Source: Schmidtea nova (Eukaryota). From it: a DNA stretch of 64,000 bases. The translations under genes were made by a program, and so were the position numbers. The notes beneath the pieces were generated by a model that worked only from the letters and a program-made list of their open reading frames with translations, was not told the origin of the DNA and did no database searches. Shown piece by piece: positions 26,906-61,332 of the stretch (positions are counted from its first letter, which is position 1; every line of letters starts with the position of its first letter). The stretch spans positions 394,258,001 through 394,322,000 of the forward strand of contig CM097882.1 of NCBI GenBank assembly GCA_044892505.1, given 5' to 3'.

Positions 26906-27121
26906 CGGAAATTAATCGGAGCTGGATGCGGCGAACCACTTAGGAATTTTTATTATTATGATTAAACTCATTTAAGATTGAACTTATGAAAAAATTTTAA
27001 TTTTATAATTACAACATTCCTTTTATCATTATTAAAATTAGAAAAATAGGAAAATCTGATATTGCATACACCAAAGGCATAAATTAGGGCCAAACTATTA
27101 AGGTGTCTATAATTACAATTT

Positions 27122-27158
<37 letters not shown>

Positions 27159-27573: not shown

Positions 27574-27627
<54 letters not shown>

Positions 27628-34314: not shown

Positions 34315-35462
34315 CTTGATCCTGTAATAAATGTTATCTTATGTTACAATTATAAGTTTTCAATTATATTTTTTCATTGTTTGTTTGAATGAGGATACAG
34401 ATAAAAATAAAAGAGATCAAATAAATTACTTGATTAATAAATGAATCACGGCTTAGCGAAAATATTCAAATGGAAATCTTGTATTGAAAATCCACAGCGA
34501 TAGAGCGGTTAATTTAAAGGGACAAAAATGGGCAATAAACCTTCTATCGGTAGCCCTTGGACCCAGGAGATATTCGGTCAATCATAGTTTCGTATTAACG
34601 ACGCTCACTGATTGCGAATACCCACCCATTTGTTGCATTACCAACGTTACTTAGTGACGGGCAACAAGATGGTTATTACAATGTTTTGTATGTTGAGTTG
34701 TTGATACGAGCCATAGTAACGTCAAGGTCATATTGACGATCAACAACCCACCAATATAATAAATTGATTTTTAACTCAAGATAGTAAATAAATATAAAAT
34801 ATGCTAAAATAGCTTTAAAATATTGTTAAAAAAACAATTAATAATTATTACTCATTAACTGATCTTGATAAATGTCTTTGTGGCCATTAATTACAGACTG
34901 TTGATGTATTCTTGTTTATTCATATGTTAGAAAACACAATCTGTATCATGGAATAAATATTCTAAATTGAATTTTAGTATCAAAGATCATTAGTATAATT
35001 GAAAAAGCAGACATTTAAGTATTTGCATGATTATCGAGGTAAGTTTTGTAGAATTTCAAGTATTTTAGTATAATTATTAGTATCTTATTACGATATGTAA
35101 AAAGTATTGCAAAAGAATTATCTAGCTAATTAGGCAATAGCCAAAACGAAAAGAATCTTTCTAACTTTCTCTGATTGTTTGGCTAAAGTGTGAATAATAT
35201 TTTTGAAGGGAAGATGCTATTTTTGGTTACTATTATTGAATAGAAGCATTAGATACTATTATTATTTTTGATGTGACATTAATTATTAAGTTTCTGTTTG
35301 TTGATAAATTATTTGGTAGAAATTATAGAAAAATCACTTATTATCATCGAACTTTGTAAATTTAGAATCATTATTTTATCGTTAATATTATTATATTTCA
35401 TTACTTTAAAGGATGAAATGATTATTTTATTCGTAAATTTTGTGTTAAAACAATATGGATAA

Positions 35463-36056
35463 TGTAGGAATGCTAAAAGCAAATAAGATTTTATTAATAG
35501 AAATTGATCTCCAATTGACAAGTTGGTCTTTGGCAACCGGAAATCCTGACCGATGATAACAAGAGTTGAAATGAGCAAGCTCCATGACAGTCCGTATTGA
35601 TTGATTTCTGGTGATGGCGAATAATCGTTTAATCGAGATTGATTGTGATCCAATGTATTGATTTGTAGATTTTTTGAGTTATACATTTCAGATTTGTCTG
35701 GATAGTATATTAATATTGATCCAGTTGATGACAAGCATCTTCCAGTTTGTACGGCTTCTTTACGCATTCCAGCAGCGAAACATTTCTGCAATCTACGGAA
35801 CTGGCAATTGTTTCTTCTTTGAATATCGACTACACAATCTCCACTAGAGTAGAACTGATAATTGTTGTCATTTGATGAAAACGAGTCGCTGTGAATGTCT
35901 TGAGTGAATTGGCATATCGAATCATTGTTAACAGCTTGCATTTTTTTTGATCAGCGTGAAAAAGTGAAAATATATAAATATTAAAACAACATCTAATTTA
36001 ATCTATTTAATAATTAATTAATTTATAAAATTGGAAATTTAATCTAAGGCACTACA
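35463..36056 (-). repeat. 3' LTR (594 bp) containing a nuclear-receptor fragment
   Basis: tgtagtgcc...ttcctaca; three differences from the 5' LTR found by eye. Confidence 0.93.
35464..35941 (-). pseudogene. Nuclear hormone receptor fragment inside the 3' LTR (second zinc finger/T-box, hinge, start of LBD)
   Basis: CVVDIQRRNNCQFRRLQKCFAAGMRKEAVQ and LSIGDQFLLIKSY. Confidence 0.88.
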
Positions 36057-36120
36057 ATAGCCCCCGCCGAAGTACGCGGAGCGTCTCTAAGCTACAAAAT
36101 GGATTTGGGTGTTGGGTGAG

Positions 36121-38295: not shown

Positions 38296-39340
38296 GAAAC
38301 ATTGTAATCACTGAGCTGCGTTTCTAAGACCAAAAGGCATGAACATGTATTCAAAATTCCCAAATGGTGTAGTGACAGCCGTTTTGTGGACGTCGTCCGT
38401 ATGGATGGGAAATTGGTGGTATGCTTTCGAGAGGTCTATAGTTGAGAACACTGTAGATTGTGAAAAGCGTGTTATTAAATCTCTAATGAGTGCATTGGGT
38501 AAGCGTCGTGGACTGTTACTTGGTTGAGCTGTCGATAATCTCCACAGGGTCTGAATGATCCGTCTTTTTTTGTTACTACGTGTATTGGCGAAGCCCATGG
38601 TGAAGATGAACGACGTAAAATGCCTACGTTTTCTAGACTGACAAATTCAGCTTTGACTGCGTCGAGTTTCGTGGAAGAGAGAGGTCTGGCTCGATTGTGT
38701 TGTGGTATGCATGGTAATGTGTGAATCTAGGGAGTCGATAGGGTAGTGGGTGGTATGGTATCGGATTTAGTGATGAGGTTTGGATATTTGATTGAAATTA
38801 ATTTGATCATGTCATCGATGGTATCTAGATTGGCTGATTGGTCGATGTCCAAAGTGGTTTTATCGTTTTCCATCGTAGAATCTTGATGAATCGAGTTGAG
38901 TTGTGTCGGTGTAGATGTCTGCGTTGAAATTGATGTTACATTTGACGATGAAATTGTCGGTATATTGGCATTGTCGTGTTTTACAGTGAACAACTTACGA
39001 TTTTTGCAATCTACCATGATGGATTCGTTGCTTAAAAAATCGGAGCCTAATATTGGGTGGATCGTGTCTGCTATGTGGAAGGTGTGAGTGAAAGTTGAGT
39101 TTAATGTTGGTATTGTGAATGAGAGTTTATTTGTTCCCAAAAATTGGATCGGTGTGCTGTTAGCGGCCAAGACAGTGAACGAAGATTTGAAGTCTGGTGT
39201 GAAAGTTGTTGGAAGGATTGAAAATGACGAGCCCGAATCTACGAGAAAATGAATTGATGAGCTGGAGTCGAAGTTTGCTTCAACAGTGAAGATATTGTTG
39301 ATCGCAAGGACGCTGCCTGAAAATCCAGGGTTGACAGACA
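38296..39340 (-). pseudogene. Gypsy protease and RT N-terminal half, frameshifted
   Basis: IHFLVDSGSSFSIL (protease); FSTIDLSKAYHQFPIH...KTAVTTPFGNFEYMFMPFGLRNAAQ; stops and frame changes relative to the pol ORF. Confidence 0.85.
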
Positions 39341-39483
39341 GCGGCGCTAGTTTTTTTTGGGAGAATTGAAATTGTTTTTGTCGTATGATTTATTTGAGGA
39401 ACGGTTTACAAAAGTGCAACCTGAAAGGCATTTTTGTGCGTGTATACCGAAGATATTGTGATAGATGCAAATAGGAATGATCC

Positions 39484-40312
39484 TCAAAGTGGAAGAGTGT
39501 TTAGCCATGAACATCCTATATGGCATGTTCTTGCGTCGGATGAGAATTTCCTGTGAAAAAAACAAGTCAGAGTGGGAAATGAATTCGGTTTATCGTTTCT
39601 TTGGGTGTGTGTAGTTACCTGAGAGGAGTTGAGTATCGCGTCGACTGTTTTTGTCAGAGAAGATATCTGTTCCTGTAATGAAGGGTCGGAAACTGATGCG
39701 ATGGTAGTTGGTGCGTTTCGGATGGGGGGTCGAGTAACCAACTTATCAGCAATTTTTGCAAGTTGAAAAGGATCATCGGAATCGACAACGAGGAGTGAGG
39801 TCTGGATGTGATATGGAAGAGCTGTTAAAAATTGATGGCATAGGAGAGCAGTGTTTTTTGATAAACCGGTGTGGACGGCCTCGAGTTCGCGTACTAGTTG
39901 AGATAAAAAGGATGATGGGGGTTGACCGGCGTATGGGGTGGGTTTTGATAACTTTTCGATCGCTGAAGTGCGCGTGGGTGAATATTTTTTTTATGACCGC
40001 TTTGATTGATTCATAAGGGGTTTCTGAGTTTAATGCGTCAGCTATTTGTGAGCCTAATTCTGACATTAACTCGTCGGGTATTGCATATAGCAGAAGATCT
40101 TGCCTAGACTTGGGATTGGCTCTAGTGCGCGATTCAAAAATGCGGAACCAAGATGATGGTGTGCCGTCTGCGTCTAAAAATATCAGTTGAGTGCGACCTA
40201 TGGACGTGGGAGGGTTATGGTCATTGTTAGTTTTGGCACCGCCTCTTGCCGCATGAAGAGATTTATTATTGCGTTTGTTGGGACTGAAAGAGGATCTGTG
40301 ATGGGAACTCCG
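39484..40312 (-). pseudogene. Gypsy gag, frameshifted
   Basis: PSSWFRIFES, TPYESIKAVI and CFFHRKFSSDARTC motifs, same Gag family as the 15.8-kb remnant. Confidence 0.8.
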
Positions 40313-40630
40313 TTATTTAAAATAAAGAAGTCGTTGTGTTCTATTAAAAAAAACGTTTAATATCGTTAAAAAGTTTGTCGTGGTAATTTTAACTGTGTGA
40401 ATAATAGTTTTGTGGCGTACAGTGATGTTGAGTAAGCCGTCATGAAGGGTAAATGGTTGTGAACAGGTAGGGGAAACTGTTGTAGTTTTGGTTATAGGAC
40501 TATGAAAATTATTATTAAAATAATTATTAAAATTTTTATTGAGTATATTATTAAAATTATTATTAATATAAATGAAGTAATTAGATGAATTTAAATATTC
40601 ACATAATAAATTCAAAAATCTTACGTTTGT

Positions 40631-40644
40631 CACTTCTGACACCA
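40631..40644 (-). promoter_or_regulatory. Primer-binding site TGGTGTCAGAAGTG (tRNA-Leu type)
   Basis: Begins 2 nt after the CA end of the 5' LTR. Confidence 0.85.
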
Positions 40645-40646
40645 AT

Positions 40647-41240
40647 TGTAGGAATGCTAAAAGCAAATAAGATTTTATTAATAGAAATTGATCTCCAATT
40701 GACAAGTTGGTCTTTGGCAACCAGAAATCCTGACCGATGATAACAAGAGTTGAAATGAGCAAGCTCCATGACAGTCCGTATTGATTGATTTCTGGTGATG
40801 GCGAATAATCGTTTAATCGAGATTGATTGTGATCCAATGTATTGATTTGTAGATTTTTTGAGTTATACATTTCAGATTTGTCTGGATAGTATATTAATAT
40901 TGATCCAGTTGATGACAAGCATCTTCCAGTTTGTACGGCTTCTTTACGCATTCCAGCAGCGAAACATTTCTGCAATCTACGGAACTGGCAATTGTTTCTT
41001 CTTTGAATATCGACGACACAATCTCCACTAGAGTAGAACTGATAATTGTTGTCATTTGATGAAAACGAGTCGCTGTGAATGTCTTGAGTGAATTGGCATA
41101 TCGAATCATTGTTAACAGCTTGCATTTTTTTTGATCAGCGTGAAAAAGTGAAAATATGTAAATATTAAAACAACATCTAATTTAATCTATTTAATAATTA
41201 ATTAATTTATAAAATTGGAAATTTAATCTAAGGCACTACA
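40647..41240 (-). repeat. 5' LTR (594 bp) containing the same nuclear-receptor fragment (40648-41125)
   Basis: TG...CA ends; same length as the 3' LTR; TSD immediately outside. Confidence 0.93.
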
Positions 41241-41951
41241 GATAATAAAACTATAAATTGTTTATAATTAGAATGATCCACTGTGAAGTTAACATTTCAT
41301 TTATTTTGATTTTTTAAATCTTTATAAATTTTCGAATTAATGACAATTTATATATTTAATTAAAAATTATAGTAATCTCATCATGGAAAAGGCACTACAA
41401 AGTGTAAATAAACGAATGAACCGTTTCAGAGAAAGAAATGGAATATTAGAAAAGAAAAATGGCATTTGGACAAACTCATTCAACGCGGCAAAACAATGGA
41501 ATCGGCCTGGTTCTGTACGGAGAAAATAAAGCGCGCACACCTTAATTTTCGTCCTTTGGTCACAATTATTAAAAAACACTAATAAATGAAATATTAACAC
41601 TATTTAATGCAAAGGCCATACTATCAAATAAAAAACCCAATTATAATCAATGTCGATAAAAAATCTGTCTTAAGAAATGTTTACAATTAACTTTGTGAAC
41701 GATAAACCAATAGCAAGTTGCAATCAGTTTTATAAATCTTTATATAAAAGAATATATTTATTAATTAAATATAAAATTTTAAACATAAATATTTGATAAT
41801 GGAATAAAAGTTGTTTAAACTGTTTATTTATTGATATTGATTACTCGGTGATATATTTCTGATTTGCAAATGAAACTTTTATTTTGGCTATTAATTATAA
41901 AGGTAAGAATTGTTTTTTTTTGGAAAACAATTGGTTCATTGTGAATTTCAG

Positions 41952-42222
41952 ATTGCGAATTATTTATGTCAAAGTGATATTGATAAGTTCAAATCATATA
42001 ACTGCTACGTTGAGTCAATACCAACTTCTTACGTTGGTCATGTGAATGTATCAAAATCAGGTTTTTTTTGCGGTAAATGGAATGATTACTTTCTTTCGCT
42101 CGATTTATTTCTCCGATACAAGGATTACGGAAATCATAATTATTGTCGAAATTACTTTTCATTAAAGTCCGTTCATTGTTACTCTGGAATTGGGGTACTG
42201 TTGTGTGATGTTCCTCGATGTG
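41952..42222 (+). CDS. Kringle-domain exon of an extracellular modular protein
   Basis: tttcag acceptor; CYVESIPTSYVGHVNVSKSGFFCGKW...HNYCRN...CY...CDVPRC; g|gtgag phase-1 donor. Confidence 0.8.
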
Positions 42223-42859
42223 GTGAGAGAATGTTTTGAATTTCTCAATTATCTTAAAATACAAATATATATTTCGAAATTACAGCGAGCGATAGATGAC
42301 AAAAATAAACGATATCAATTAGAATAAAGTTCTTTAGTTTAATTATTTTTTAATTCTTCTATCGTCTTAATCAAATTACTTTTAAGTTACGATATTTTAT
42401 ATTACTTGCTTAAAATGCTGAAAATATTAAGTACTTTATAAAATACTCACTTCATTCTATTTTAGTTTTTCTTTCCGTAATTTAAAGACTTTTTGACATC
42501 GTATTTAAATTCTTGATTTCCTCATGAACCTCTTATTACGTGTTTTTGTTAACAAATACTGTAATAGATGCCTTTTTGGTATGTGTTTAATGATAAATAC
42601 TTTGAATTTCTTCAGAAACGGATTCCAAATTTCCGCCAATCTTAAATATTTTAGAGATTAGCACAAACACTTTGAGTGCATAAGTTGGTATGGTTTTGGT
42701 GATGGTCACCATATTAGAAGATTCATAAACCATACAAGTTAGTAGAGTAGGGGGAGCGCCCAAGAACAGGAACAGACCCCCCCTCCCCCCTCCCCCCACC
42801 CCCCCCCAAAATTTTTTTTAATTTTTAATTTTGTTTAAATGAAGTGAATTTTTTAATTT

Positions 42860-44030
42860 TGATTTTTTGTTTAAATGAAGTCAATTTAATTTTATTATTT
42901 TGTTTAAATGAAGACTTTATTTATTTTTATTTTTATTTTTATTTTTTTTTATTTATTTTTATTTATTTTTATTAATTTTTATTTTTATTTATTTTTATTA
43001 ATTTATTTTTAATAATTTATATGTATTAATTTATTTTTATTAATTTTTATTAATTTATTTTTATTAATTTATTTTTAATTTATTTTTTAATAATTTATTT
43101 GTATTAATTTATTTTTATTAATTTATTTTTATTAATTTATTTGTATTAATTTTTATTAATTTATTTTTAATTTATTTTTAATTTATTTTTATTAATTTAT
43201 TTGTATTAATTTATTTTTATTAATTTATTTTTAATTTATTTTTAATAATTTATATGTATTAATTTATTTTTATTAATTTTTATTAATTTATTTTTATTAA
43301 TTTATTTTTTAATAATTTATTTGTATTAATTTATTTGTATTAATTTATTTGTATTAATTTATTTTTATTAATTTATTTGTATTAATTTTTATTAATTTAT
43401 TTTTATTAATTTATTTTTAATAATTTATTTGTATTAATTTATTTGTATTAATTTATTTTTATTAATTTATTTTTATTAATTTATTTTTTAATAATTTATT
43501 TGTATTAATTTATTTTTATTAATTTATTTTTAATTTATTTTTAATAATTTATATGTATTAATTTATTTTTAATTTATTTTTTAATAATTTATTTGTATTA
43601 ATTTATTTGTATTAATTTATTTTTATTAATTTATTTGTATTAATTTATTTTTATTAATTTATTTGTATTAATTTTTATTAATTAATTTTTATTAATTTAT
43701 TTTTAATAATTTATTTGTATTAATTTATTTGTATTAATTTATTTTTATTAATTTATTTTTATTAATTTATTTTTTAATAATTTATTTGTATTAATTTATT
43801 TTTATTAATTTATTTTTAATTTATTTTTAATAATTTATATGTATTAATTTATTTTTAATTTATTTTTTAATAATTTATTTGTATTAATTTATTTGTATTA
43901 ATTTATTTTTATTAATTTATTTTTTAATAATTTATTTGTATTAATTTATTTTTATTAATTTATTTTTATTAATTTTTATTAATTTATTTTAATTATTTAT
44001 TTTAATTTTTATTTAAATAATTTTAATTTT
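42860..44030. repeat. AT-rich 11-12-bp minisatellite (tattaatttat-ttg/ttt); mirrored at about 54520-55640
   Basis: Direct reading. Confidence 0.9.
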
Positions 44031-44039
44031 TTGATCTGG

Positions 44040-45240
44040 TTATTTTTGTAAAGGATTTTTACTCTGGTAATTTTGTATAGGAATTTCTACTCCGAGATTT
44101 TCTATGGCAAAAAGGGACTCTGGATTTTTTGTACAGGGAATTTTTATACATGAAATTTTGGACTGGTATTTTTGTATAGGATTTTGGTCTGGTTATTTTG
44201 AATAGGATTTTCAACTCCCATATTTTTCTAGGGCAAAAATAGACTCTGGTAATTTTGAACTAAATTTTTTATGGTAAATAAAAACACGTGTAAATTTTTT
44301 AAACTATTAAAATACATTGAAATTATTTTGAATAGGATTTTCAACTCCCATATTTTTCTCGGGCAAAAAGGGACTCTGGTAATTTTGAACTGAAATTTTA
44401 ATGGTAAATAAAAAACACGTGTAAATTTTTTAAACAAGTAAATTATCATTAAAGTATTTTGTATAAGATTTTCAACTCCCAGATATTTTCTAGGGCAAAA
44501 AAGGGACTCTGGTAATTTTGAACTAAATTTTTTATGGTAAATAAAAACACGTGTAAATTTTTAAACTATTAAAATACATTGAAATTATTTTGAATAGGAT
44601 TTTCAACTCCCATATTTTTCTAGAGCAAAAATAGACTCTGATAATTTTGAACTGTAATTTTAATGGTAAATAAAAAACACGTGTAAATTTTTTAAACTAG
44701 TAAAATACATTGAAATTATTTTGAATAGGATTTTCAATTCCCAGATTTTTCTTCAGGCAAAAATAGACTCTGGTAATTTTGAATATGATTTTTAGTCTGG
44801 TATTTTTGAAAATAATATTTTGGTCGGCGAAAATCAAAAAATTAAAAAGTGGTCAGAATTCAATAATTTTTATACCAATCTACTGAGAATTGAATGGGGA
44901 ACAAAAAAGGTTCAAAAAGTAAAAACATGAAATTTTGACTTTTCCGACCCAATTTTACACGTAAAAAGGGTCAACTCGGAGAATTTCCAAAAAATCAAAA
45001 ATGCTCAGAATCAAATAATTTTTATACCAATCTACTGAGAATCGAATGGCGAACAAAAAAGGTTCAAAAAGTAAAAACATGAAATTTTGACTTTTCCGAT
45101 CCAATTTTTACACGTAAAAAGAGTCAACTCGGGGAAATTCCAAAAATTAAAAAGTTGTCAGAATTCAATAATTTTTATACCAATCTACTGAGAATTGAAT
45201 GGTGAACAAAAAAGGTCAAAAAATTAAAATCATGAAAAAC
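44040..45240. repeat. Tandem arrays of about 131-bp (about 5 copies) and about 152-bp (3 copies) units; mirrored at about 53310-54510
   Basis: ggattttcaactccca recurs about every 131 bp; ataccaatctactgaga recurs at 44872, 45024 and 45177. Confidence 0.88.
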
Positions 45241-46010
45241 CAAAATTTTATACGTAAAATTACAGTCTCAGTAAAAAAGGGTAAAATATATAAAAACGTG
45301 GAAATATTTAAAATAAAAATTTTTAAACTAAATAATTAAATCTAAATAAATTTATGATAATTAAATAAAAAAGTAAATAAATTCTATACGAATTTCAAAA
45401 CTCAATAAATAATTCACTCATTATTTTGTATTTAATTTATCAAGTAAAATGGTACATTAAATAAAAGCATGGAAATAATAAGTAAATTAAACTTAGAATT
45501 TAAAAATAATTTGTACTGGATTTATGAAAAATATCAAAGTAAATAAATTAAAGATAGAATTTTAAAAATAATTATGAATTTAATGATAAATAGAAATATA
45601 AGTAAATTAAGAATAAAAAAGTAAATTAAGAAAGACGTGAGTTTTAATGTCATAATTTAAAAAAGAATTGCTTTTAAAGGAACTGTTTAAGGTAATATTT
45701 GAAAAATGTGAGAATAATTAATTATTTTTGAAATTTTTTAAAGTAAAATTTATTAACAATAAGGTCAATGTAGAATTTTTTAGCAATAAAATCAATGAAA
45801 ATTTTTTAATTAATAAATACAAATCTAATTGTTTTTCAATATGATGTTTTTTAAGGAAATGATCAAATGTAGTAAATAAAACACATGTAAATATTGAATT
45901 TATTTAGAATAAAAATAGTTATTAAACAAGAGTTTTTACAATTTTGTATACTAAGTTAAAAAAAAAATATCAATTAATGACATAAATTTTTAAAAATAAA
46001 CGTAATAATT

Positions 46011-46147
46011 NNNNNNNNNNNNNNNNNNNNNNNNNNNNNNNNNNNNNNNNNNNNNNNNNNNNNNNNNNNNNNNNNNNNNNNNNNNNNNNNNNNNNNNNNN
46101 NNNNNNNNNNNNNNNNNNNNNNNNNNNNNNNNNNNNNNNNNNNNNNN
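46011..46147. other. 137-N gap, mirrored by a 137-N gap at 52405-52541
   Basis: N runs at symmetric positions. Confidence 0.99.
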
Positions 46148-46299
46148 CTAAGTACCAGCAATAAACCGATCAAATAACTAATAATCTCATTACACACACA
46201 AATAAACCACTGACTAGTAACTGATCAAATGCCAACTGACTCTATCCACAAATCAACAATCGACTAGTTACTTACAAGTTACCAACTGATTCTATATAT

Positions 46300-47110
46300 T
46301 AACCAACTAGGAAATTGTTCCATGTGTCAATCACTTCCTATTGCCTATATATCAAATAATCCAATCCCCTTAGTTAACAAATAGTACAATTCCTTACTAA
46401 CCAACTAGTTCTATACATTAACCAACTAACTTTATTCACAAATCACCAACCAACTAACTAACTAACCAGCAACCACTTCCTTACTAACCAACTAGTTCTA
46501 TACATCAACCAACTAACTCTTCACATTAACCAAGTAACTAACTAACTAACTAACCAGCAATCAATTCATTACTAACCAACTAGTTCTATACATTAACCAA
46601 CCAACTAACTAACTAACCAGCAACCACTTCCTTACTAACCAACTAGTTCTATACATCAACCAACTAACTCTTCACATTAACCAAGTAACTAACTAACTAA
46701 CTAACCAGCAATCAATTCATTACTAACCAACTAGTTCTATACATTAACCAAGTAACTAACTAACTAACTAACCAGCAACCACTTCCTTACTAACCAACTA
46801 GTTCTATACATTAACCAACTAACTTTATCTATACTAACCAACCAACTACACTAACCAACTAACTAGCTATACATACTAATCTCTTACTAACCAACTAGTT
46901 CTATTCATTATTCTTGTACCAACCAACCAACTACATTAACCAACTAACTAACTAACTAACTAACCAATTCCTTACTTCCCAACTAACTCTTCTCATTAAC
47001 CAACTAACTATTCATAAATCAACAACAGACTAGTTAATTATTAAATATCAATTGATTCTATCCACAATCTACTAGTTAAATCAACTAATTGGATACCAAC
47101 TGACTCTATA
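46300..47110. repeat. AACC/AACT-rich composite tandem repeat; mirrored at about 51440-52250
   Basis: Recurrent cttactaaccaactagttctatacattaaccaactaact. Confidence 0.88.
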
Positions 47111-48549
47111 TATTAAACAAATAAATCTTCACTCTAAGGAAATTGTTCCACGTATCAATTAACTCTTCGCATTAATTAGATAAGATATTTAAAACTAACT
47201 GATTCTAAATATCGTGTCATAAAATTAAATTTATTACTTTGAATAATTTAATTAATCTTTAGTTGATTATCAGTTTTCAAAAAGGTATACTAATATCTAC
47301 GTAGTTAAAATGAAATTTTTTATTAATTAAAGTTATTAAAATTTCGAATATATTTAAAATGCAAATGACTTTTAATTCAAAGCTCTATTGAAATCATTGT
47401 TCATTTATTTCTTCACTTGATAACTAACATGTATAAGTAATTTAAAAATCATTATAAAAAACTCTGTTAACTAGGTAAACATATTAAAATGATAAATAAG
47501 CAACTAATGAAATATTTTTTGTTACTTCCTATTACATGTTCAATTTATTTCTTCACTCTGATAATTTAAAAGAATAAATAAATAAATATTCAATTAATTC
47601 TAAAAATAATAAAAATTAATTCAAATTTCAATACAAATATTTATTTATTAAACATTTTTATTAACCATGCTAAACAGTACTACCAAGTGTTTTTGTTATT
47701 GGATTCTAGTATCAGATTCTATTATTTCCAATTCACATCAACATTGACGATATGTTTTTCATCAATAGCGATGGATAATAAAATCCCATTGGTTCAAACA
47801 TGTGTATTTTATCGGGTTTCACATAAACTGCAATCATGAAAATATAATTTGAATCTTTTACAGGTAAAAACCATCACAAAAGAGGTTCTGCTACCAAAGG
47901 TTCTGCTAGAAAGGTTCTGCTACGTGATAAATTTAATGAAAATGTAACAATAATAGTATATAAGTGAATATACAATATGAATCTTTTACAGGTAAAAACC
48001 ATCACAAAAGAGGTTCTGTTACCAAAGGTTCTGCTAGAAAGGTTCTGATACTGAATATAATTGTTAATAATGAATTTTACCAAAATATTTATTAATTTTT
48101 CATTTTAAATATTTTTAGTGAATTATTAATATTAATATTTTTATTATTTTTATTATTAACACGTAATAATTTTGCAACATTAAATCTGTTTCGAATGTTC
48201 ATTATGAAATTTATAAAAGTAGATATAATAAGAAAAAATAATCAATTTATTCACAAAGGGCAAATTATGTTAAACGAAATCTGATTGGTCAATTTGAATT
48301 ATGAAAACATATATATATATATATAAATTGATTAAAAATTACAGATTTCATTAAAAATGCATCAACTTAAAAGTAAGTTTAATTAATTTTGAATGATTAT
48401 TTTTTAATATTTTATTCTTGAATCTTCGAACAAAAATATGTTTAAACAAGAAGTAATGAAAATTATTCTTAATGATGTTGTCAAACCTGTTTTGAAAAAT
48501 TATAGAAACAAATATATGTGAATAAAATTTATTTATCAAATCTTCTCTT

Positions 48550-49025
48550 TTCATTTCATTTTATTTTATTTTTTGTTTTGGTTAATTTTAATTTTTAATA
48601 ACAATTATTTTTTGTGTTAAATTTATTACCAAATATTTAAAATCGATTAGTTTTTTATAAAAATAAAAATAATTAATTTTTTATTTTATTTTTTGTTTTG
48701 GTTAATTTTAATTTTTAATAACAATTATTTTTTGTGTTAAATTTATTACCAATTATTTAAATTTGATTAGTTTTTATTAAATAAAAATAATTAATTTTTT
48801 ATTTTATTTAATTTTTTGTTTTGCTTAACTTAAATTTTTAATAACAAATATTTTTTTTTGTGTTAAATTTATTAAAATAAAAATAATTAATTTTTTTTTT
48901 ATTTTATTTAATTTTTTGTTTTGGTTAATTTAAATTTTTAATAACAATTATTTTTTGTGTTAAATTTATTACCAAATATTTAAAATCGATTAGTTTTTTA
49001 TTAAAATAAAAATAATTAATTTTAT
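48550..49025. repeat. About 120-125-bp AT-rich tandem units; the right arm (49277-49995) has about two more units
   Basis: Mirror-coordinate sum shifts from 98301 at the centre to 98550 beyond the array. Confidence 0.85.
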
Positions 49026-52000
49026 TATCATAATTATTCTAAATTGATTTTGTTTTATTAATTGATTATACGTTTAAAATTAAAATTCAAAATAATTTTC
49101 TTTAATATTTTCCCGGCAACAATAATTAATTCGGAATTTGATATATATTCGAATATATATCAAATTCCGAATTAATTATTGTTGCCGGGAAAATATTAAA
49201 GAAAATTATTTTGAATTTTAATTTTAAACGTATAATCAATTAATAAAACAAAATCAATTTAGAATAATTATGATAATAAAATTAATTATTTTTATTTTAA
49301 TAAAAAACTAATCGATTTTAAATATTTGGTAATAAATTTAACACAAAAAATAATTGTTATTAAAAATTTAAATTAACCAAAACAAAAAATTAAATAAAAT
49401 AAAAAAAAAATTAATTATTTTTATTTTAATAAATTTAACACAAAAAAAAATATTTGTTATTAAAAATTTAAGTTAAGCAAAACAAAAAATTAAATAAAAT
49501 AAAAAATTAATTATTTTTATTTAATAAAAACTAATCAAATTTAAATAATTGGTAATAAATTTAACACAAAAAATAATTGTTATTAAAAATTAAAATTAAC
49601 CAAAACAAAAAATAAAATAAAAAATTAATTATTTTTATTTTTATAAAAAACTAATCGATTTTAAATATTTGGTAATAAATTTAACACAAAAAATAATTGT
49701 TATTAAAAATTAAAATTAACCAAAACAAAAAATAAAATAAAATAAAAAATTAATTATTTTTATTTAATAAAAAACTAATCAATTTTAAATAATTGGTAAT
49801 AAATTTAACACAAAAAATAATTGTTATTAAAAATTAAAATTAACCAAAACAAAAAATAAAATAAAATAAAAAATTAATTATTTTTATTTTAATAAAAAAC
49901 TAATCGATTTTAAATATTTGGTAATAAATTTAACACAAAAAATAATTGTTATTAAAAATTTAAATTAACCAAAACAAAAAATAAAATAAAATGAAATGAA
50001 AAGAGAAGATTTGATAAATAAATTTTATTCACATATATTTGTTTCTATAATTTTTCAAAACAGGTTTGACAACATCATTAAGAATAATTTTCATTACTTC
50101 TTGTTTAAACATATTTTTGTTCGAAGATTCAAGAATAAAATATTAAAAAATAATCATTCAAAATTAATTAAACTTACTTTTAAGTTGATGCATTTTTAAT
50201 GAAATCTGTAATTTTTAATCAATTTATATATATATATATATATGTTTTCATAATTCAAATTGACCAATCAGATTTCGTTTAACATAATTTGCCCTTTGTG
50301 AATAAATTGATTATTTTTTCTTATTATATCTACTTTTATAAATTTCATAATGAACATTCGAAACAGATTTAATGTTGCAAAATTATTACGTGTTAATAAT
50401 AAAAATAATAAAAATATTAATATTAATAATTCACTAAAAATATTTAAAATGAAAAATTAATAAATATTTTGGTAAAATTCATTATTAACAATTATATTCA
50501 GTATCAGAACCTTTCTAGCAGAACCTTTGGTAACAGAACCTCTTTTGTGATGGTTTTTACCTGTAAAAGATTCATATTGTATATTCACTTATATACTATT
50601 ATTGTTACATTTTCATTAAATTTATCACGTAGCAGAACCTTTCTAGCAGAACCTTTGGTAGCAGAACCTCTTTTGTGATGGTTTTTACCTGTAAAAGATT
50701 CAAATTATATTTTCATGATTGCAGTTTATGTGAAACCCGATAAAATACACATGTTTGAACCAATGGGATTTTATTATCCATCGCTATTGATGAAAAACAT
50801 ATCGTCAATGTTGATGTGAATTGGAAATAATAGAATCTGATACTAGAATCCAATAACAAAAACACTTGGTAGTACTGTTTAGCATGGTTAATAAAAATGT
50901 TTAATAAATAAATATTTGTATTGAAATTTGAATTAATTTTTATTATTTTTAGAATTAATTGAATATTTATTTATTTATTCTTTTAAATTATCAGAGTGAA
51001 GAAATAAATTGAACATGTAATAGGAAGTAACAAAAAATATTTCATTAGTTGCTTATTTATCATTTTAATATGTTTACCTAGTTAACAGAGTTTTTTATAA
51101 TGATTTTTAAATTACTTATACATGTTAGTTATCAAGTGAAGAAATAAATGAACAATGATTTCAATAGAGCTTTGAATTAAAAGTCATTTGCATTTTAAAT
51201 ATATTCGAAATTTTAATAACTTTAATTAATAAAAAATTTCATTTTAACTACGTAGATATTAGTATACCTTTTTGAAAACTGATAATCAACTAAAGATTAA
51301 TTAAATTATTCAAAGTAATAAATTTAATTTTATGACACGATATTTAGAATCAGTTAGTTTTAAATATCTTATCTAATTAATGCGAAGAGTTAATTGATAC
51401 GTGGAACAATTTCCTTAGAGTGAAGATTTATTTGTTTAATATATAGAGTCAGTTGGTATCCAATTAGTTGATTTAACTAGTAGATTGTGGATAGAATCAA
51501 TTGATATTTAATAATTAACTAGTCTGTTGTTGATTTATGAATAGTTAGTTGGTTAATGAGAAGAGTTAGTTGGGAAGTAAGGAATTGGTTAGTTAGTTAG
51601 TTAGTTAGTTGGTTAATGTAGTTGGTTGGTTGGTACAAGAATAATGAATAGAACTAGTTGGTTAGTAAGAGATTAGTATGTATAGCTAGTTAGTTGGTTA
51701 GTGTAGTTGGTTGGTTAGTATAGATAAAGTTAGTTGGTTAATGTATAGAACTAGTTGGTTAGTAAGGAAGTGGTTGCTGGTTAGTTAGTTAGTTAGTTAC
51801 TTGGTTAATGTATAGAACTAGTTGGTTAGTAATGAATTGATTGCTGGTTAGTTAGTTAGTTAGTTACTTGGTTAATGTGAAGAGTTAGTTGGTTGATGTA
51901 TAGAACTAGTTGGTTAGTAAGGAAGTGGTTGCTGGTTAGTTAGTTAGTTGGTTGGTTAATGTATAGAACTAGTTGGTTAGTAATGAATTGATTGCTGGTT

Positions 52001-55000
52001 AGTTAGTTAGTTAGTTACTTGGTTAATGTGAAGAGTTAGTTGGTTGATGTATAGAACTAGTTGGTTAGTAAGGAAGTGGTTGCTGGTTAGTTAGTTAGTT
52101 GGTTGGTGATTTGTGAATAAAGTTAGTTGGTTAATGTATAGAACTAGTTGGTTAGTAAGGAATTGTACTATTTGTTAACTAAGGGGATTGGATTATTTGA
52201 TATATAGGCAATAGGAAGTGATTGACACATGGAACAATTTCCTAGTTGGTTAATATATAGAATCAGTTGGTAACTTGTAAGTAACTAGTCGATTGTTGAT
52301 TTGTGGATAGAGTCAGTTGGCATTTGATCAGTTACTAGTCAGTGGTTTATTTGTGTGTGTAATGAGATTATTAGTTATTTGATCGGTTTATTGCTGGTAC
52401 TTAGNNNNNNNNNNNNNNNNNNNNNNNNNNNNNNNNNNNNNNNNNNNNNNNNNNNNNNNNNNNNNNNNNNNNNNNNNNNNNNNNNNNNNNNNNNNNNNNN
52501 NNNNNNNNNNNNNNNNNNNNNNNNNNNNNNNNNNNNNNNNNAATTATTACGTTTATTTTTAAAAATTTATGTCATTAATTGATATTTTTTTTTTAACTTA
52601 GTATACAAAATTGTAAAAACTCTTGTTTAATAACTATTTTTATTCTAAATAAATTCAATATTTACATGTGTTTTATTTACTACATTTGATCATTTCCTTA
52701 AAAAACATCATATTGAAAAACAATTAGATTTGTATTTATTAATTAAAAAATTTTCATTGATTTTATTGCTAAAAAATTCTACATTGACCTTATTGTTAAT
52801 AAATTTTACTTTAAAAAATTTCAAAAATAATTAATTATTCTCACATTTTTCAAATATTACCTTAAACAGTTCCTTTAAAAGCAATTCTTTTTTAAATTAT
52901 GACATTAAAACTCACGTCTTTCTTAATTTACTTTTTTATTCTTAATTTACTTATATTTCTATTTATCATTAAATTCATAATTATTTTTAAAATTCTATCT
53001 TTAATTTATTTACTTTGATATTTTTCATAAATCCAGTACAAATTATTTTTAAATTCTAAGTTTAATTTACTTATTATTTCCATGCTTTTATTTAATGTAC
53101 CATTTTACTTGATAAATTAAATACAAAATAATGAGTGAATTATTTATTGAGTTTTGAAATTCGTATAGAATTTATTTACTTTTTTATTTAATTATCATAA
53201 ATTTATTTAGATTTAATTATTTAGTTTAAAAATTTTTATTTTAAATATTTCCACGTTTTTATATATTTTACCCTTTTTTACTGAGACTGTAATTTTACGT
53301 ATAAAATTTTGGTTTTTCATGATTTTAATTTTTTGACCTTTTTTGTTCACCATTCAATTCTCAGTAGATTGGTATAAAAATTATTGAATTCTGACAACTT
53401 TTTAATTTTTGGAATTTCCCCGAGTTGACTCTTTTTACGTGTAAAAATTGGATCGGAAAAGTCAAAATTTCATGTTTTTACTTTTTGAACCTTTTTTGTT
53501 CGCCATTCGATTCTCAGTAGATTGGTATAAAAATTATTTGATTCTGAGCATTTTTGATTTTTTGGAAATTCTCCGAGTTGACCCTTTTTACGTGTAAAAT
53601 TGGGTCGGAAAAGTCAAAATTTCATGTTTTTACTTTTTGAACCTATTTTGTTCCCCATTCAATTCTCAGTAGATTGGTATAAAAATTATTGAATTCTGAC
53701 CACTTTTTAATTTTTTGATTTTCGCCGACCAAAATATTATTTTCAAAAATACCAGACTAAAAATCATATTCAAAATTACCAGAGTCTATTTTTGCCTGAA
53801 GAAAATTTGGGAATTGAAAATCCTATTCAAAATAATTTCAATGTATTTTACTAGTTTAAAAAATTTACACGTGTTTTTTATTTACCATTAAAATTACAGT
53901 TCAAAATTATCAGAGTCTATTTTTGCTCTAGAAAAATATGGGAGTTGAAAATCCTATTCAAAATAATTTCAATGTATTTTAATAGTTTAAAAATTTACAC
54001 GTGTTTTTATTTACCATAAAAAATTTAGTTCAAAATTACCAGAGTCCCTTTTTTGCCCTAGAAAATATCTGGGAGTTGAAAATCTTATACAAAATACTTT
54101 AATGATAATTTACTTGTTTAAAAAATTTACACGTGTTTTTTATTTACCATTAAAATTTCAGTTCAAAATTACCAGAGTCCCTTTTTGCCCGAGAAAAATA
54201 TGGGAGTTGAAAATCCTATTCAAAATAATTTCAATGTATTTTAATAGTTTAAAAAATTTACACGTGTTTTTATTTACCATAAAAAATTTAGTTCAAAATT
54301 ACCAGAGTCTATTTTTGCCCTAGAAAAATATGGGAGTTGAAAATCCTATTCAAAATAACCAGACCAAAATCCTATACAAAAATACCAGTCCAAAATTTCA
54401 TGTATAAAAATTCCCTGTACAAAAAATCCAGAGTCCCTTTTTGCCATAGAAAATCTCGGAGTAGAAATTCCTATACAAAATTACCAGAGTAAAAATCCTT
54501 TACAAAAATAACCAGATCAAAAAATTAAAATTATTTAAATAAAAATTAAAATAAATAATTAAAATAAATTAATAAAAATTAATAAAAATAAATTAATAAA
54601 AATAAATTAATACAAATAAATTATTAAAAAATAAATTAATAAAAATAAATTAATACAAATAAATTAATACAAATAAATTATTAAAAAATAAATTAAAAAT
54701 AAATTAATACATATAAATTATTAAAAATAAATTAAAAATAAATTAATAAAAATAAATTAATACAAATAAATTATTAAAAAATAAATTAATAAAAATAAAT
54801 TAATAAAAATAAATTAATACAAATAAATTAATACAAATAAATTATTAAAAATAAATTAATAAAAATTAATTAATAAAAATTAATACAAATAAATTAATAA
54901 AAATAAATTAATACAAATAAATTAATAAAAATAAATTAATACAAATAAATTAATACAAATAAATTATTAAAAAATAAATTAAAAATAAATTAATACATAT

Positions 55001-56574
55001 AAATTATTAAAAATAAATTAAAAATAAACTAATAAAAATAAATTAATACAAATAAATTATTAAAAAATAAATTAATAAAAATAAATTAATAAAAATAAAT
55101 TAATACAAATAAATTAATACAAATAAATTATTAAAAATTAATTAATAAAAATTAATTAATAAAAATTAATACAAATAAATTAATAAAAATAAATTAATAC
55201 AAATAAATTAATACAAATAAATTAATACAAATAAATTATTAAAAAATAAATTAATAAAAATAAATTAATAAAAATTAATAAAAATAAATTAATACATATA
55301 AATTATTAAAAATAAATTAAAAATAAATTAATAAAAATAAATTAATACAAATAAATTAATAAAAATAAATTAATACAAATAAATTAAAAATAAATTAATA
55401 AAAATTAATACAAATAAATTAATAAAAATAAATTAATAAAAATAAATTAATACAAATAAATTATTAAAAAATAAATTAAAAATAAATTAATAAAAATAAA
55501 TTAATAAAAATTAATAAAAATAAATTAATACATATAAATTATTAAAAATAAATTAATAAAAATAAATAAAAATAAAAATTAATAAAAATAAATAAAAATA
55601 AATAAAAAAAAATAAAAAAAAAAATAAAAATAAATAAAGTCTTCATTTAAACAAAATAATAAAATTAAATTGACTTCATTTAAACAAAAAATCAAAATTA
55701 AAAAATTCACTTCATTTAAACAAAATTAAAAATTAAAAAAATTTTTTGGGGGGGTGGGGGGAGGGGGGGGAGGGGGGTCTGTTCCTGTTCTTGGGCGCTC
55801 CCCCTACTCTACTCAAGTTTTTTATACTATAATAAAATATCGTGATTCGTGAAAGAAATAAATTGAGTAAATAACATGAACAAATTCATACATTTAAATT
55901 ACGCCACATTATACATAACATTTAAGATCCAGACAATCATTTTGTATCATTCAGTCATATAATTTAGAAAACAATATAAATATGGATTTTTATAATTACA
56001 CCAAAGAACATAAATTAAGGGCCAGACAAGCAATAATTAAGGTATCTATAATCACAATTTAAATTATATACAAAAAAATATACATACCTACTGCAGATAA
56101 GGACAAAGATAAAAAGCATAGTCATAAATTACGGGCCTATACAATAGGAAAGATAAAAAATAAATTAAGTCAAAAAACACTTAAACAACACACAAAAACC
56201 CTATAATAAAAAATACGAACACATGGACATAATTTAAGTGACAATCTTTAATTAAGGGATTTTAAAATTAAAAAAATAAAGTGATTTTTGAAGATATTTC
56301 AGAACCTTCGTCAAAATCAACAATACTATTTATTGGAGAGGATTAAGGAGAAATGTAATTTACAATTATATTAAATAATTTTATAAAAATAATTTTTAGA
56401 AATGCAGAAAATGAAGTTATTGTGCCTCAACCAGCCGAATCTGTAGAAGAGAAACATCCAAAAACGAAAAATAAATTTTAATTTTTAATTTGTAACTCAA
56501 ATTTCATAGATCTACAGAATCTAATAAATAAATTACTAATAGATGTAATGAAACGCGGTGAAACGGTATAAAAT

Positions 56575-56650
56575 GATATAGTCGCTTTCTAAACCACATA
56601 GAAAGTGTATTTAGTAAATTAAAAGGGGCTATCAGAAAAGAAGTTTTGCG
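56575..56650 (+). pseudogene. Possible Tc1/IS630-like (DDE_3) transposase remnant
   Basis: YSRFLNHIESVFSKLKGAIRK resembles the YSPxLNPIExVWSxLK motif. Confidence 0.45.
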
Positions 56651-57447
56651 GCAATCAAAGGATGGAATACCATTGATTACAAAATTTGGATGGAATCAGT
56701 CAAAAGATTTGAAGAGAACGAATAAGAAAAAGGATCATATTTTCATTTAAAAATTATTATGATCATATAAAAAGGTTTTTCCTAAAGTCTTTATTCAAAG
56801 AGGAAATCTTGTGGGACATGCAAATAAGCACGTGTAATTTAATTACCGAATAAAAATTATAATGACTTACCTTTCAGTATTTCATAAATATCTAAAAAGT
56901 ATTTATAAAATAAATAGATATTTAACTTAAAATATTAAATAAAATATGTAATTAAATTAAGATATGTTAAAATAGCTTTAAATTAAAATCATAATAAATA
57001 GTAATTACTCACCAACTGCCTGTATAAATATCTTTGTGGCCCTTAATTACAGACTGTTGGTGTATACTATTTTTATTTTAGAGATTTTCATTTTTTAAAT
57101 AAAGACTAAATCAAAATTGCTTTTAAACTGAAATAGAAAAATGAACTTTGTTAATTCAAAACAGGAGTCTTATAGATCGTGTATAGAGTCAATAAATGTG
57201 ATAAAAGCAATGCCGAACACTTTTGTAACCGCAAATTCGATGAATATATTACTGAATTTGCATTCAGAAGTTGAAAAAGGATATTTTTCTTTAGGGGAAT
57301 GGTTAATCTACTTTTATGTTAAAACTGTATTTGCTACAGGCTCTACTCCCTTTCATGCTTTCATTAAATTATATTGTATATTTAATTTATCTTTAACAAT
57401 TTATGAAATGTATAATCATATTTTATTCTAATTTATTTATAATTTAG

Positions 57448-57813: not shown

Positions 57814-58300
57814 GTAAATTATTATAATGTTATTTAATATTTTTTAATAAACTGTACAATAATAAATCCAACATGGCACTGAAATAATTAAAAATAAACG
57901 CCAATCCAAAATTATATTCCACACAATATATTTCAAGAAAATCATTCTTATAATCAAATGCTTTTCAGATGAACATTCTAATATTAATCAAATAAATAGA
58001 TTCATTTAAACAAATTAACCATAATTCTTAAATTTCACAAAATTTTATACTAAATTTTTTTTTAAATATAATGATTAATTTTCTCTTAAATTAATCTACT
58101 TATTTGATTTATATTAGAATGTTTGACTGAAAGGCACTCAATTATGAAGAGTTTCTTGAAATATTTTGTGCGGAATATTATTTTGGATTGTTGTGGTTTC
58201 TAAAATAATAATCTAATTTAATCATTATTAAAAATGAATTTTACTTTTATTAATCCTAAATAATTAATAAACAACTAGAGAATTGAAAGTCAGACTAGTC

Positions 58301-60330: not shown

Positions 60331-60808
60331 TTGTTTGTTTGAATATCGACCTTTGTGATTATGTTTTAAATAAAAAGGATGTATATTAAAAGTTTTATAA
60401 CGAATAAATCTGATTTAACTCTTAAATTGCTTGTTATTACTATACTAGCTTGGAGCTAAATATTAAACAAACTCGTGCGATTTAGTTAATTATAATACAC
60501 TAAATCCTCGTTTTACGGCCTTTAAAATTTCTAAAATATTGGCCTGAAAGTGAAATGCTTCATAAAGAAGTAATTCAAATATCATCTCGTCTGTTTTCAA
60601 TTATGTTACGACTAAATTCTTTCTATGCTGTGGCCGTATATAGAATCTTAGACATGATTAAAGAATCCATATAAAGATGTATGAGTGTAACTAGATTTTG
60701 CAGTAATTAATTCTGACAATTAAAGATGCTCATTTAACTAATAATGTTTTAGTGGTTTTGGAAAATATAAATAAGTAAAACAAATGCTCATTTATTTCAA
60801 ATATTTAG

Positions 60809-61081
60809 TAATAGGAAATGAAAAGTGTTCTAATCGCGATGACAAATTTGATTTTGTTGGCAAACTTGATCATGATCAAAATGGGGTCAAATGTATAGAG
60901 TGGAATTCTTCTAGTGTAGCGTCACAATTTTCTGAACATGTGGTGTTTCCAGATAATGCCCTTGATACACATCAATTTTGTAGAACTCTGTATACAGAAA
61001 ATACATTGAAAATGTACAACTCAATCTGCTTTACAAATTGGACTGAACCATCTTTCTGTGATATTCCCAAATGTGAAACAG
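60809..61081 (+). CDS. Second kringle-domain exon
   Basis: Phase-1 acceptor (60809 or 60815); C...FVGKLDHDQNGVKCIEW...HQFCR...CFT...CDIPKC; g|gtattt donor. Confidence 0.8.
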
Positions 61082-61332
61082 GTATTTAAGATTTTCTTAA
61101 ATTTATGACTATTTGCACTTAAAAATAAATAATTTTATTGATAATTTTAAAATCAGAAAAGCCAGTGCTTTTATTCTTCCACAGTTTTGACTCAATTTAG
61201 TAAATATATAAATACTAGCTTTATTACCCGGCTTCGTCAGTATTAAATTCAAACTTATTCTTTTTTAATTTTAATGAGTTTTACATATCACATCCAATTT
61301 CTGCCAAATCATAAATATGCATATCTACTTGG

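What the first reader, a model, noticed from the sequence alone, without database searches (positions are those of the whole stretch)
42741..55813. 13-kb perfect-centre palindrome with Polinton-type ends and a true 6-bp TSD: a snap-back defective Maverick?
Seen: two arms of about 6.5 kb meet with no spacer; the termini are AGTAGAGTAG/CTACTCTACT; CAAGTT is directly repeated outside both ends; there is no credible ORF, and the interior is a mosaic of tandem arrays. Established: Polintons/Mavericks have AG...CT termini with short terminal repeats and 6-bp TSDs, and replicate as linear DNA by protein-primed PolB. Inference: fold-back replication of one end produced a palindromic defective genome, analogous to viral snap-back defective-interfering genomes, that was still integrated by the element's integrase. 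A direct TSD is not expected from a read-hairpin artefact.
Basis: partly seen in the sequence, partly recalled or inferred. Interest (0 to 1): 0.84.

Follow-up and report, generated by a model that had tools for sequence, protein, structure and literature searches.

The report
Non-coding foldback transposon with Maverick-type ends
A 13-kb, gene-less mobile element built as an almost perfect mirror image sits in an animal genome with insertion marks like those of Maverick/Polinton virus-like elements; the insertion is real, but only the sequencing reads can show whether its seamless centre is biology or an assembly error.

Summary
Positions 42741-55813 form a palindrome with no spacer; its centre lies between 49150 and 49151. 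The ends are AGTAGAGTAG / CTACTCTACT, and an exact 6-bp direct repeat, CAAGTT, flanks both. There is no credible ORF, and 58% of each arm is tandem arrays.

The insertion is genuine: the flanks are not mirror images and the duplication is exact. A 6-bp duplication, AG...CT ends and a short tandem repeat at each tip are the published Maverick/Polinton end signature. Other 6-bp superfamilies have different ends.

The arms hold no Maverick gene or remnant. The element is therefore not a defective Maverick genome. It looks like a non-autonomous foldback-type passenger, probably integrated in trans.

All six base substitutions between the arms lie in the outer 2.2 kb. The inner 4.2 kb has none. So at least 2.2 kb of each arm is a real, distinct inverted repeat. 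The inner identity and seamless centre could come from three sources:
- strand-switch copying before integration;
- later arm-to-arm conversion;
- a foldback-read assembly error bridged through the repeats.

A 249-nt surplus in one arm, with unique sequence, argues mildly against the artefact. No related copy could be retrieved.

The parts
42735..42740 (.). Left copy of the 6-bp target-site duplication CAAGTT
42741..49150 (+). Left arm of the palindrome (6,410 nt)
49151..55813 (-). Right arm (6,663 nt), 99.8% identical to the left arm apart from indels
55814..55819 (.). Right copy of the target-site duplication CAAGTT
42741..42750 (+). Terminal motif (AGTAG)x2; its mirror is at 55804-55813
42741..42813 (+). 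G+C-rich terminal domain (69% GC in the first 70 nt, against 19% for the element). It includes a tract of four C runs at 42777-42807; the mirror tract is at 55748-55777. The two ends differ only in run lengths.
42831..42913 (+). Three subterminal direct copies of TTGTTTAAATGAAG spaced 36 and 33 nt apart; the mirror copies are at 55641-55723. These are candidate protein-binding sites (inference).
   Evidence: 8 matches against 0.25 expected
42919..44007 (+). Array of about 81 copies of a 14-nt AT-rich unit with a 286-nt higher-order period; mirror at 54544-55635
44193..44783 (+). 131-nt array, 4.5 copies; mirror at 53769-54358
44824..45237 (+). 152-nt array, 2.7 copies; mirror at 53315-53728. 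Relatives at 71-80% identity lie elsewhere in the window at 24241-24477.
46011..46147 (.). N run of 137 nt, left unread; its exact mirror is at 52405-52541
46387..47023 (+). C/A-rich arrays with periods of 63-151 nt; mirror at 51585-52165
48559..49002 (+). 100-125-nt array next to the centre, left arm
49744..49992 (-). 249-nt surplus (two units) present in the right arm only. It is 94% identical to its inner neighbour, and 40 of its 229 21-mers occur nowhere else in the element.
49148..49153 (.). Centre of symmetry (TTCGAA), no spacer
41910..42239 (+). Kringle-like exon upstream of the insertion. A second lies at 60784-61089 (+), so the element is probably in an intron (inference; both hits are below Pfam's cut-off).

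Best explanation
This is a genuine insertion of a non-coding, non-autonomous DNA element of the foldback type. Two long inverted arms, made mostly of tandem arrays, sit between specific ends. The host is an AT-rich animal genome, and the insertion probably lies in an intron of a kringle-domain gene.

Shown: the palindrome, its exact boundaries, the exact 6-bp duplication, the (AGTAG)x2 / AG...CT ends, the lack of any gene or gene remnant, and the fact that the two arms are physically distinct copies.

Inferred: the element was integrated in trans by a retroviral-type integrase of the Polinton/Maverick kind, because the duplication length and end signature are those of that group and of no other 6-bp group read about here. 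It shares only the end signature with Mavericks. It stands to them as FB, Tetris or Galileo-type foldback derivatives stand to their own superfamilies. It is not a truncated Maverick genome.

The outer 2.2 kb of the arms are real long inverted repeats, about 0.3% diverged. The substitution-free inner 4.2 kb and the seamless centre come from one arm having been copied onto the other. That copying happened either as a strand switch or hairpin replication of a one-ended molecule before integration, which would also restore the two identical ends an integrase needs, or by arm-to-arm conversion afterwards.
For: Boundaries, TSD and termini. The flanks are not mirrored. Published Maverick marks are 6-bp TSDs and short tandem end motifs beginning AG(T) (PMC8097293) and a 6-bp TSD for Polinton (PMC10045372). 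The total length of 13,073 bp falls inside the 12.7-24.6 kb range of intact vertebrate Mavericks. Polinton derivatives lacking polB still occur as insertion polymorphisms, and butterfly Polintons have ~2-kb TIRs (bioRxiv 10.1101/2025.02.07.637071). Foldback anatomy: arrays make up 58% of each arm, and the arms are unequal by whole repeat units. The foldback shape is thought to arise independently in different superfamilies, and TSD length is the clue to the enzyme (PMC4079207). Distinct arms: 6 substitutions, a 3-nt indel and a 249-nt surplus with unique 21-mers. Plausible host: a flanking gene's best named relative is from the flatworm Macrostomum lignano at 54% identity. Planarians have very low GC and annotated Mavericks (bioRxiv 10.64898/2025.12.11.693146).
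Against: No autonomous partner or second copy was seen. The window has no pPolB, capsid, ATPase or protease gene, and its only integrase belongs to a Ty3-type retrotransposon. The 10-nt end motif is not one of the published vertebrate motifs. Inverted repeats of 6.4 kb are far beyond the 46-1,447 bp (vertebrates) or ~2 kb (butterflies) reported. A spacer-less 13-kb palindrome is expected to be fragile, and it is also the signature of foldback reads (PMC12870357; PMC3300023, abstract). The mirrored N runs and the homopolymer-only differences at the tips could be technical.
Confidence: 0.45

Rival explanations
1. The insertion and its long inverted repeats (at least 2.2 kb) are real, but the inner mirror and the seamless centre are an assembly error. 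In this scenario a foldback or chimeric long read (flank-repeat-interior-interior'-repeat') was joined to the true right flank through the right-hand repeat. The true interior beyond the fold point would then be missing from the window.
For: All substitutions between the arms lie in the outer 2,167 nt and none in the inner 4,243 nt; P is about 0.002 if the six events fell uniformly. The centre has no spacer. [quoted passage not shown] The N runs are exactly mirrored and of equal length. Differences at the tips are homopolymer lengths.
Against: The right inner arm has 249 nt more than the left, and that surplus holds 40 21-mers found nowhere else in the element. The two strands of one molecule cannot differ this way, so a second assumption is needed, such as a heterozygous array length. 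No foreign sequence sits at the centre. Mirrored N runs are also what content-based masking would give.
Confidence: 0.3
2. One reading: a snap-back defective (possibly interfering) genome of a Maverick, made by fold-back replication of one end of the virus-like element by its protein-primed polymerase, and then integrated by its integrase.
For: The end signature and 6-bp TSD. Snap-back defective genomes are defined as near-complete palindromes without coding capacity (PMC13506859). The total length lies within the size range of intact Mavericks. From my own knowledge, not checked here: incomplete adenovirus particles carry DNA from one genome end arranged as a long inverted repetition.
Against: There is no Maverick-derived sequence beyond the end signature, and no protein remnant in 6.4 kb. 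The arms are arrays of the foldback-transposon kind, and one array has relatives elsewhere in the host genome. The discontinuous divergence between arms does not fit one snap-back followed by uniform decay. No parent element is known.
Confidence: 0.12
3. A foldback-type non-autonomous element of a cut-and-paste superfamily that also makes 6-bp duplications, either known (IS3EU/GingerRoot, some Ginger2) or undescribed. It would have no link to Mavericks, and the three subterminal repeats would serve as transposase-binding sites.
For: Long, internally repetitive inverted repeats and subterminal repeated motifs are typical of cut-and-paste foldback elements. IS3EU and GingerRoot usually make 6-bp TSDs. 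No Maverick gene lies nearby.
Against: IS3EU/GingerRoot ends are TA..TA or TG..CA. Ginger ends follow TGTNR, and Ginger2 targets RTATAY. This element ends AG..CT and the target is CAAGTT. The window's cut-and-paste remnants (a Tc5/pogo HTH domain and a hAT dimerisation domain) belong, to my knowledge, to superfamilies with other TSD lengths.
Confidence: 0.2
4. Not a mobile element at all, but a host-made inverted duplication like the older one around the proteasome genes at 21.3-26.9 kb.
For: The window holds another inverted duplication and a small spacer-less palindrome.
Against: The boundaries are sharp, the ends are specific and G+C-rich, and an exact 6-bp direct repeat flanks both. Host inverted duplications leave no such marks.
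Confidence: 0.02

Closest known systems
Foldback-type transposons (Drosophila FB, Tetris, Galileo; Tm1 of root-knot nematodes)
   Same: Very long inverted arms built from tandem arrays. The arms differ in length by whole repeat units. Most copies have no coding capacity and depend on an enzyme supplied in trans (PMC4079207; abstracts).
   Different: Those elements make 7-10-bp duplications (8-10 bp for Tetris) and are assigned to the Mutator or P superfamilies. Here the duplication is 6 bp and the ends are AG..CT. The arms here are several times longer (up to 1,735 bp in Tetris), and there is no middle domain.
Polinton/Maverick virus-like elements
   Same: A 6-bp duplication, inverted ends beginning AG and ending CT, a short tandem repeat at the very tip, and a total length within the range of intact copies.
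   Different: By definition they encode a protein-primed polymerase and an integrase (abstract of PMC5499653); this element encodes nothing. Their inverted repeats are tens of bp to ~2 kb and do not fill the whole element. The exact end motif here is not one of those published for vertebrates.
Snap-back defective viral genomes
   Same: A nearly complete palindrome without coding capacity and with two identical ends (PMC13506859).
   Different: Those are copies of the parent virus's own sequence and are known as replicating molecules. Here no parental sequence is recognisable, the molecule is integrated in a chromosome, and interference is untested.
IS3EU/GingerRoot and Ginger2 transposons
   Same: Integrase-related enzymes; 6-bp duplications are usual (IS3EU/GingerRoot) or possible (Ginger2).
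   Different: Their ends are TA..TA, TG..CA or TGTNR, not AG..CT. Ginger2's preferred target, RTATAY, does not fit CAAGTT.
Foldback reads and whole-genome-amplification palindromes (technical artefacts)
   Same: A seamless mirror junction; identical inner arms.
   Different: An artefact on its own mirrors the flanks too. Here the flanks differ, a direct duplication is present, and the arms differ by substitutions and by a 249-nt block.

Membership tests
Polinton/Maverick | 6-bp target-site duplication | tested here: met
   CAAGTT at 42735-42740 and 55814-55819, exactly 6 bp; criterion
Polinton/Maverick | Ends 5'-AG...CT-3' with a short tandem repeat at the tip | tested here: met
   (AGTAG)x2 and (CTACT)x2. 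The published vertebrate motifs are (AGT)2 and (AG)3, so the type matches but the exact motif does not.
Polinton/Maverick | Encodes a protein-primed family B polymerase and a retroviral-type integrase | tested here: not met
   No ORF over 73 aa; 41 stop-to-stop pieces gave no Pfam family. The element can therefore be at most a non-autonomous dependant, not a member proper.
Polinton/Maverick | Capsid, packaging ATPase and protease genes | tested here: not met
   none elsewhere in the window either
Polinton/Maverick | Terminal inverted repeats of tens of bp to about 2 kb around a unique interior | tested here: not met
   The inverted repeats span the whole element at 6.4 kb each, with no unique interior.
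Polinton/Maverick | A gene-bearing partner with the same ends in the same genome | not tested
   The host genome is not in the accessible collections.
Foldback-type transposons | Long inverted arms made of tandem repeats that form most of the element, with no coding capacity | tested here: met
Foldback-type transposons | Duplication length of the Mutator (8-10 bp) or P (7-8 bp) enzymes that move the known families | tested here: not met
   6 bp; criterion and from my own knowledge
IS3EU/GingerRoot | Ends TA..TA (or TG..CA) with a 6-bp duplication | tested here: not met
   The duplication length fits but the ends are AG..CT
Ginger1/Ginger2 | Ends TGTNR; 4-5-bp duplications or an RTATAY target | tested here: not met
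Snap-back defective viral genome | Palindromic copy of one end of an identifiable parent genome | tested here: inconclusive
   It is a palindrome, but no parental sequence is recognisable and no parent is available for comparison.
Foldback-read assembly artefact | Mirror junction supported only by reads that fold at their own midpoint, with halved depth | not testable with these tools
   No reads are available. Indirect evidence points both ways.

The most novel reading that the evidence does not exclude
The element is an integrated tail-to-tail dimer of a gene-less satellite that depends on a Maverick. Strand switching of the protein-primed replication machinery on a one-ended molecule would have made it. 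It would then have been selected because only the dimer has two integrase-competent ends and a length (13.07 kb) within the size range of intact Mavericks. That would be a chromosomal fossil of linear, extrachromosomal Maverick replication, and the first satellite or defective-genome analogue for this group in an animal.
Probability: 0.12. Interest if true: 0.8.

Novelty: new variant of a known kind. Interest (0 to 1): 0.45.

Why it matters
Gene-less dependants of Mavericks are barely documented. How these virus-like elements replicate and integrate is still inferred mostly from their genes. A foldback-shaped passenger with Maverick-type ends would show that the end signature alone is enough for integration in trans. 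It would also add a further, independent origin of the foldback shape. If the centre is real, it would hint at strand-switch products of the replication machinery. If the centre is an artefact, the locus is a useful warning: a correct target-site duplication does not vouch for the interior of an element that has long inverted repeats.

Tried and rejected
1. Exact look-ups of the window's own small ORFs, to find independent assemblies of the locus. These were the junction-spanning ORF 42587-42799, the arm ORFs 48351-48554 and 44228-44449, and the proteasome ORF. None is on record.
2. Metagenome scan with a 36-mer spanning the centre, which could match only palindromic copies: 0 hits.
3. Metagenome scan for the empty site (left flank + one CAAGTT + right flank): 0 hits. 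Both blanks say nothing, because the host is unlikely to be in that collection.
4. Rfam and tRNA scans of the element: nothing. So it did not land in an snRNA or tRNA target, and it carries no known RNA.
5. Paralogous empty site within the window: the right flank from about 120 nt outward belongs to a dispersed repeat also found at 27011-27607, but the left flank does not match there.
6. Terminal hairpin at the ends: not better than shuffles, z = -0.75.
7. Extension of the small palindrome at 4980-5127 across the neighbouring N runs: no.
8. Kapitonov & Jurka 2006, Krupovic & Koonin 2015 and Daniell & Mullenbach 1978 are not held in the library. Their content is used only through papers that cite them, or is marked as my own knowledge.
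9. The large representative protein search, structure prediction and fold search were not used, because the element has no protein to search with.
10. The first alignment block used wrong coordinates and is disregarded. Only its run-length part is used.


Full report
**1. The observation**

Positions 42741-55813 form a palindrome whose centre lies between 49150 and 49151, inside TTCGAA, with no spacer. The arms are 6,410 and 6,663 nt. Aligned in mirror orientation they give 6,399 matches, 9 mismatched columns and 6 indels, including a 249-nt block present only in the right arm at 49744-49992.

The ends read AGTAGAGTAG and CTACTCTACT, a 5-nt unit repeated twice. The terminal 36-mer occurs nowhere else in the window. 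CAAGTT precedes the left end and follows the right end. The repeat is exactly 6 bp, the flanks beyond it are unrelated, and the chance of such a match is below 1e-3.

No ORF exceeds 73 aa, and 58% of an arm is tandem arrays. The array units are 14 nt near the tip and mostly 131-152 nt further in.

**2. The N runs (tested first, as asked)**

46011-46147 and 52405-52541 are exact mirror images, each 137 nt, and their flanks are perfectly mirrored. No frame is at stake. Content-based masking would give exactly this pattern. Two true gaps of identical estimated size would instead be suspicious. I did not fill them or look their letters up.

**3. Context**

- The window is an AT-rich animal genome. 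A flanking proteasome alpha-type ORF has its best named relative in the flatworm Macrostomum lignano, at 54% identity. I did not identify the species.
- Kringle-like exons on the + strand lie on both sides, at 41910-42239 and 60784-61089. The element is therefore probably intronic, but both hits are below Pfam's cut-off.
- The window also holds a Ty3-type LTR retrotransposon, a Tc5/pogo fragment and a hAT fragment. It has no polymerase B, capsid, ATPase or protease gene.

**4. What the element is**

It is a real insertion. The flanks are not mirrored and the duplication is direct, so the outer boundaries cannot come from a hairpin read.

Duplication length is set by the integrating enzyme. Among the groups I read about, 6 bp is characteristic of Polinton/Maverick and usual for IS3EU/GingerRoot. 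IS3EU/GingerRoot ends are TA..TA or TG..CA, and Ginger ends are TGTNR. Vertebrate Mavericks have 6-bp duplications and end motifs that are short tandem repeats beginning AG: (AGT)2//(ACT)2 and (AG)3//(CT)3. These repeats are thought to serve the jumping-back step of protein-primed replication. The present ends are of that type, although the exact motif differs.

The arms contain nothing else of a Maverick. I scanned 41 stop-to-stop pieces of at least 35 aa against Pfam, and none gave a credible hit. Rfam and tRNA scans were also empty.

The anatomy is that of foldback transposons:
- long inverted arms of tandem arrays;
- arms unequal by whole repeat units;
- no coding capacity.

That shape is thought to arise independently in different superfamilies through loss of the enzyme gene and elongation of the inverted repeats. 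One of the arrays has diverged relatives elsewhere in the window. Three subterminal copies of a 14-mer in each arm are candidate protein-binding sites.

**5. The arms are not plain mirror copies, and their divergence is discontinuous**

| Region of the arm | Differences between arms |
|---|---|
| Outer 2,167 nt | Six substitution-type differences, a 3-nt indel, and run-length changes in the C/A/T tracts at the tips |
| Inner 4,243 nt | No substitution; only an (AT)n length change and the 249-nt surplus |

If the six substitutions fell uniformly, P is about 0.002 (note). The surplus is 94% identical to its neighbour and holds 40 21-mers found nowhere else in the element.

At least the outer 2.2 kb are therefore two real, slightly diverged inverted repeats. 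The inner identity needs a separate cause. There are three readings:
- **M1:** the whole palindrome was made before integration, and the outer arrays are simply more mutable.
- **M2:** the inner part was made identical later, by arm-to-arm conversion or break-induced copying between the arms.
- **M3:** the inner mirror is an assembly error bridged through the real repeats.

Sequence alone cannot separate M2 from M3.

**6. The artefact question**

Foldback reads make up about 0.55-0.6% of ONT genomic reads, some with nothing between the halves. Whole-genome amplification also makes palindromic chimeras.

Against the artefact stands the 249-nt surplus with unique sequence, which the two strands of one molecule cannot produce. 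I put the chance that the centre is real at about 0.6.

**7. Mechanism (inferred)**

An integrase of the retroviral type needs two matching ends. A one-ended fragment cannot be integrated with a duplication, but its mirror-image dimer can. Strand switching of a strand-displacing polymerase, or hairpin formation followed by replication, turns a one-ended molecule into such a dimer. The definition of snap-back defective genomes is given. From my own knowledge, not checked here, incomplete adenovirus particles carry one genome end as a long inverted repetition. The dimer's 13.07 kb lies within the 12.7-24.6 kb range of intact vertebrate Mavericks.

This fits M1. Under M2 the element was already a long-repeat foldback element when it integrated. 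In both cases integration in trans by a Maverick-type integrase is the best-supported step, and it remains an inference.

**8. Comparison and membership**

The element works like a foldback transposon and carries the end signature of a Maverick. It is not a Polinton/Maverick, because the defining genes were tested and are absent. It is not one of the known foldback families, whose duplications are 7-10 bp. It is not IS3EU/GingerRoot or Ginger, whose ends differ.

Butterfly Polintons have ~2-kb inverted repeats, polB-less Polinton derivatives still show up as insertion polymorphisms, and C. elegans strains carry insertions of the Polinton inverted repeats alone. Dependants of this group therefore exist. 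I found no description of a fully palindromic, gene-less one. That is a limited literature search, not proof of absence.

**9. Limits**

- The host genome is not in the accessible collections: look-ups and two metagenome scans were blank.
- I did not scan public collections with the element's termini.
- Slip to report: in my reasoning I recalled from memory a few short end motifs of known viruses and transposon superfamilies. The motifs quoted in this report come from the window or from papers read with the tools.

**10. Verdict**

The best reading is a non-coding foldback-type element with Maverick-type ends, a new variant of known kinds. The reality of its seamless centre is unresolved until the reads are examined.

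Noticed in passing
window 4980-5127 (and 5285-5305 / 5460-5480): A second spacer-less perfect palindrome with 74-nt arms at 100% identity. Its right arm ends exactly at the N run 5128-5284. A further 21-nt inverted pair brackets the N run 5321-5459. The mirror identity does not continue beyond the N runs.
   Followed up: partly
window 21333-22776 and 25445-26941: An older inverted duplication with one proteasome alpha-type ORF in each arm (21238-21885 on the - strand, 26405-26905 on the + strand). Identity is 97-98% in the coding part and decays to 73-93% outside it. Relatives of the element's 152-nt repeat lie near its centre, at 24241-24477.
   Followed up: partly
window 35463-41240: A Ty3-type LTR retrotransposon with 594-nt LTRs that are 99.5% identical, and a 724-aa pol ORF carrying RT, RNase H and integrase domains. 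The weak nuclear-receptor zinc-finger hits at 35309-35941 and 40313-41125 lie inside the LTRs, so they are not evidence of receptor genes.
   Followed up: partly
window 42777-42807 and 55748-55777: Each end of the element carries a 30-31-nt tract of four runs of 6-9 C (G on the other strand), a motif capable of forming four-stranded structures. The two ends differ only in run lengths.
   Followed up: no
window 57885-58233 and 7729-8290: Two related short inverted-repeat structures that look like MITEs, one of them 2 kb to the right of the element.
   Followed up: no
window 55933-56924 and 27011-27607: The right flank, from about 120 nt outside the insertion, belongs to a dispersed repeat that has a second, colinear copy at 27 kb. 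The left flank has no counterpart there.
   Followed up: partly
window 1788-2138 and 61631-62711: Fragments of cut-and-paste transposases: a Tc5/pogo DNA-binding domain and a hAT dimerisation domain. Neither is linked to the element.
   Followed up: no
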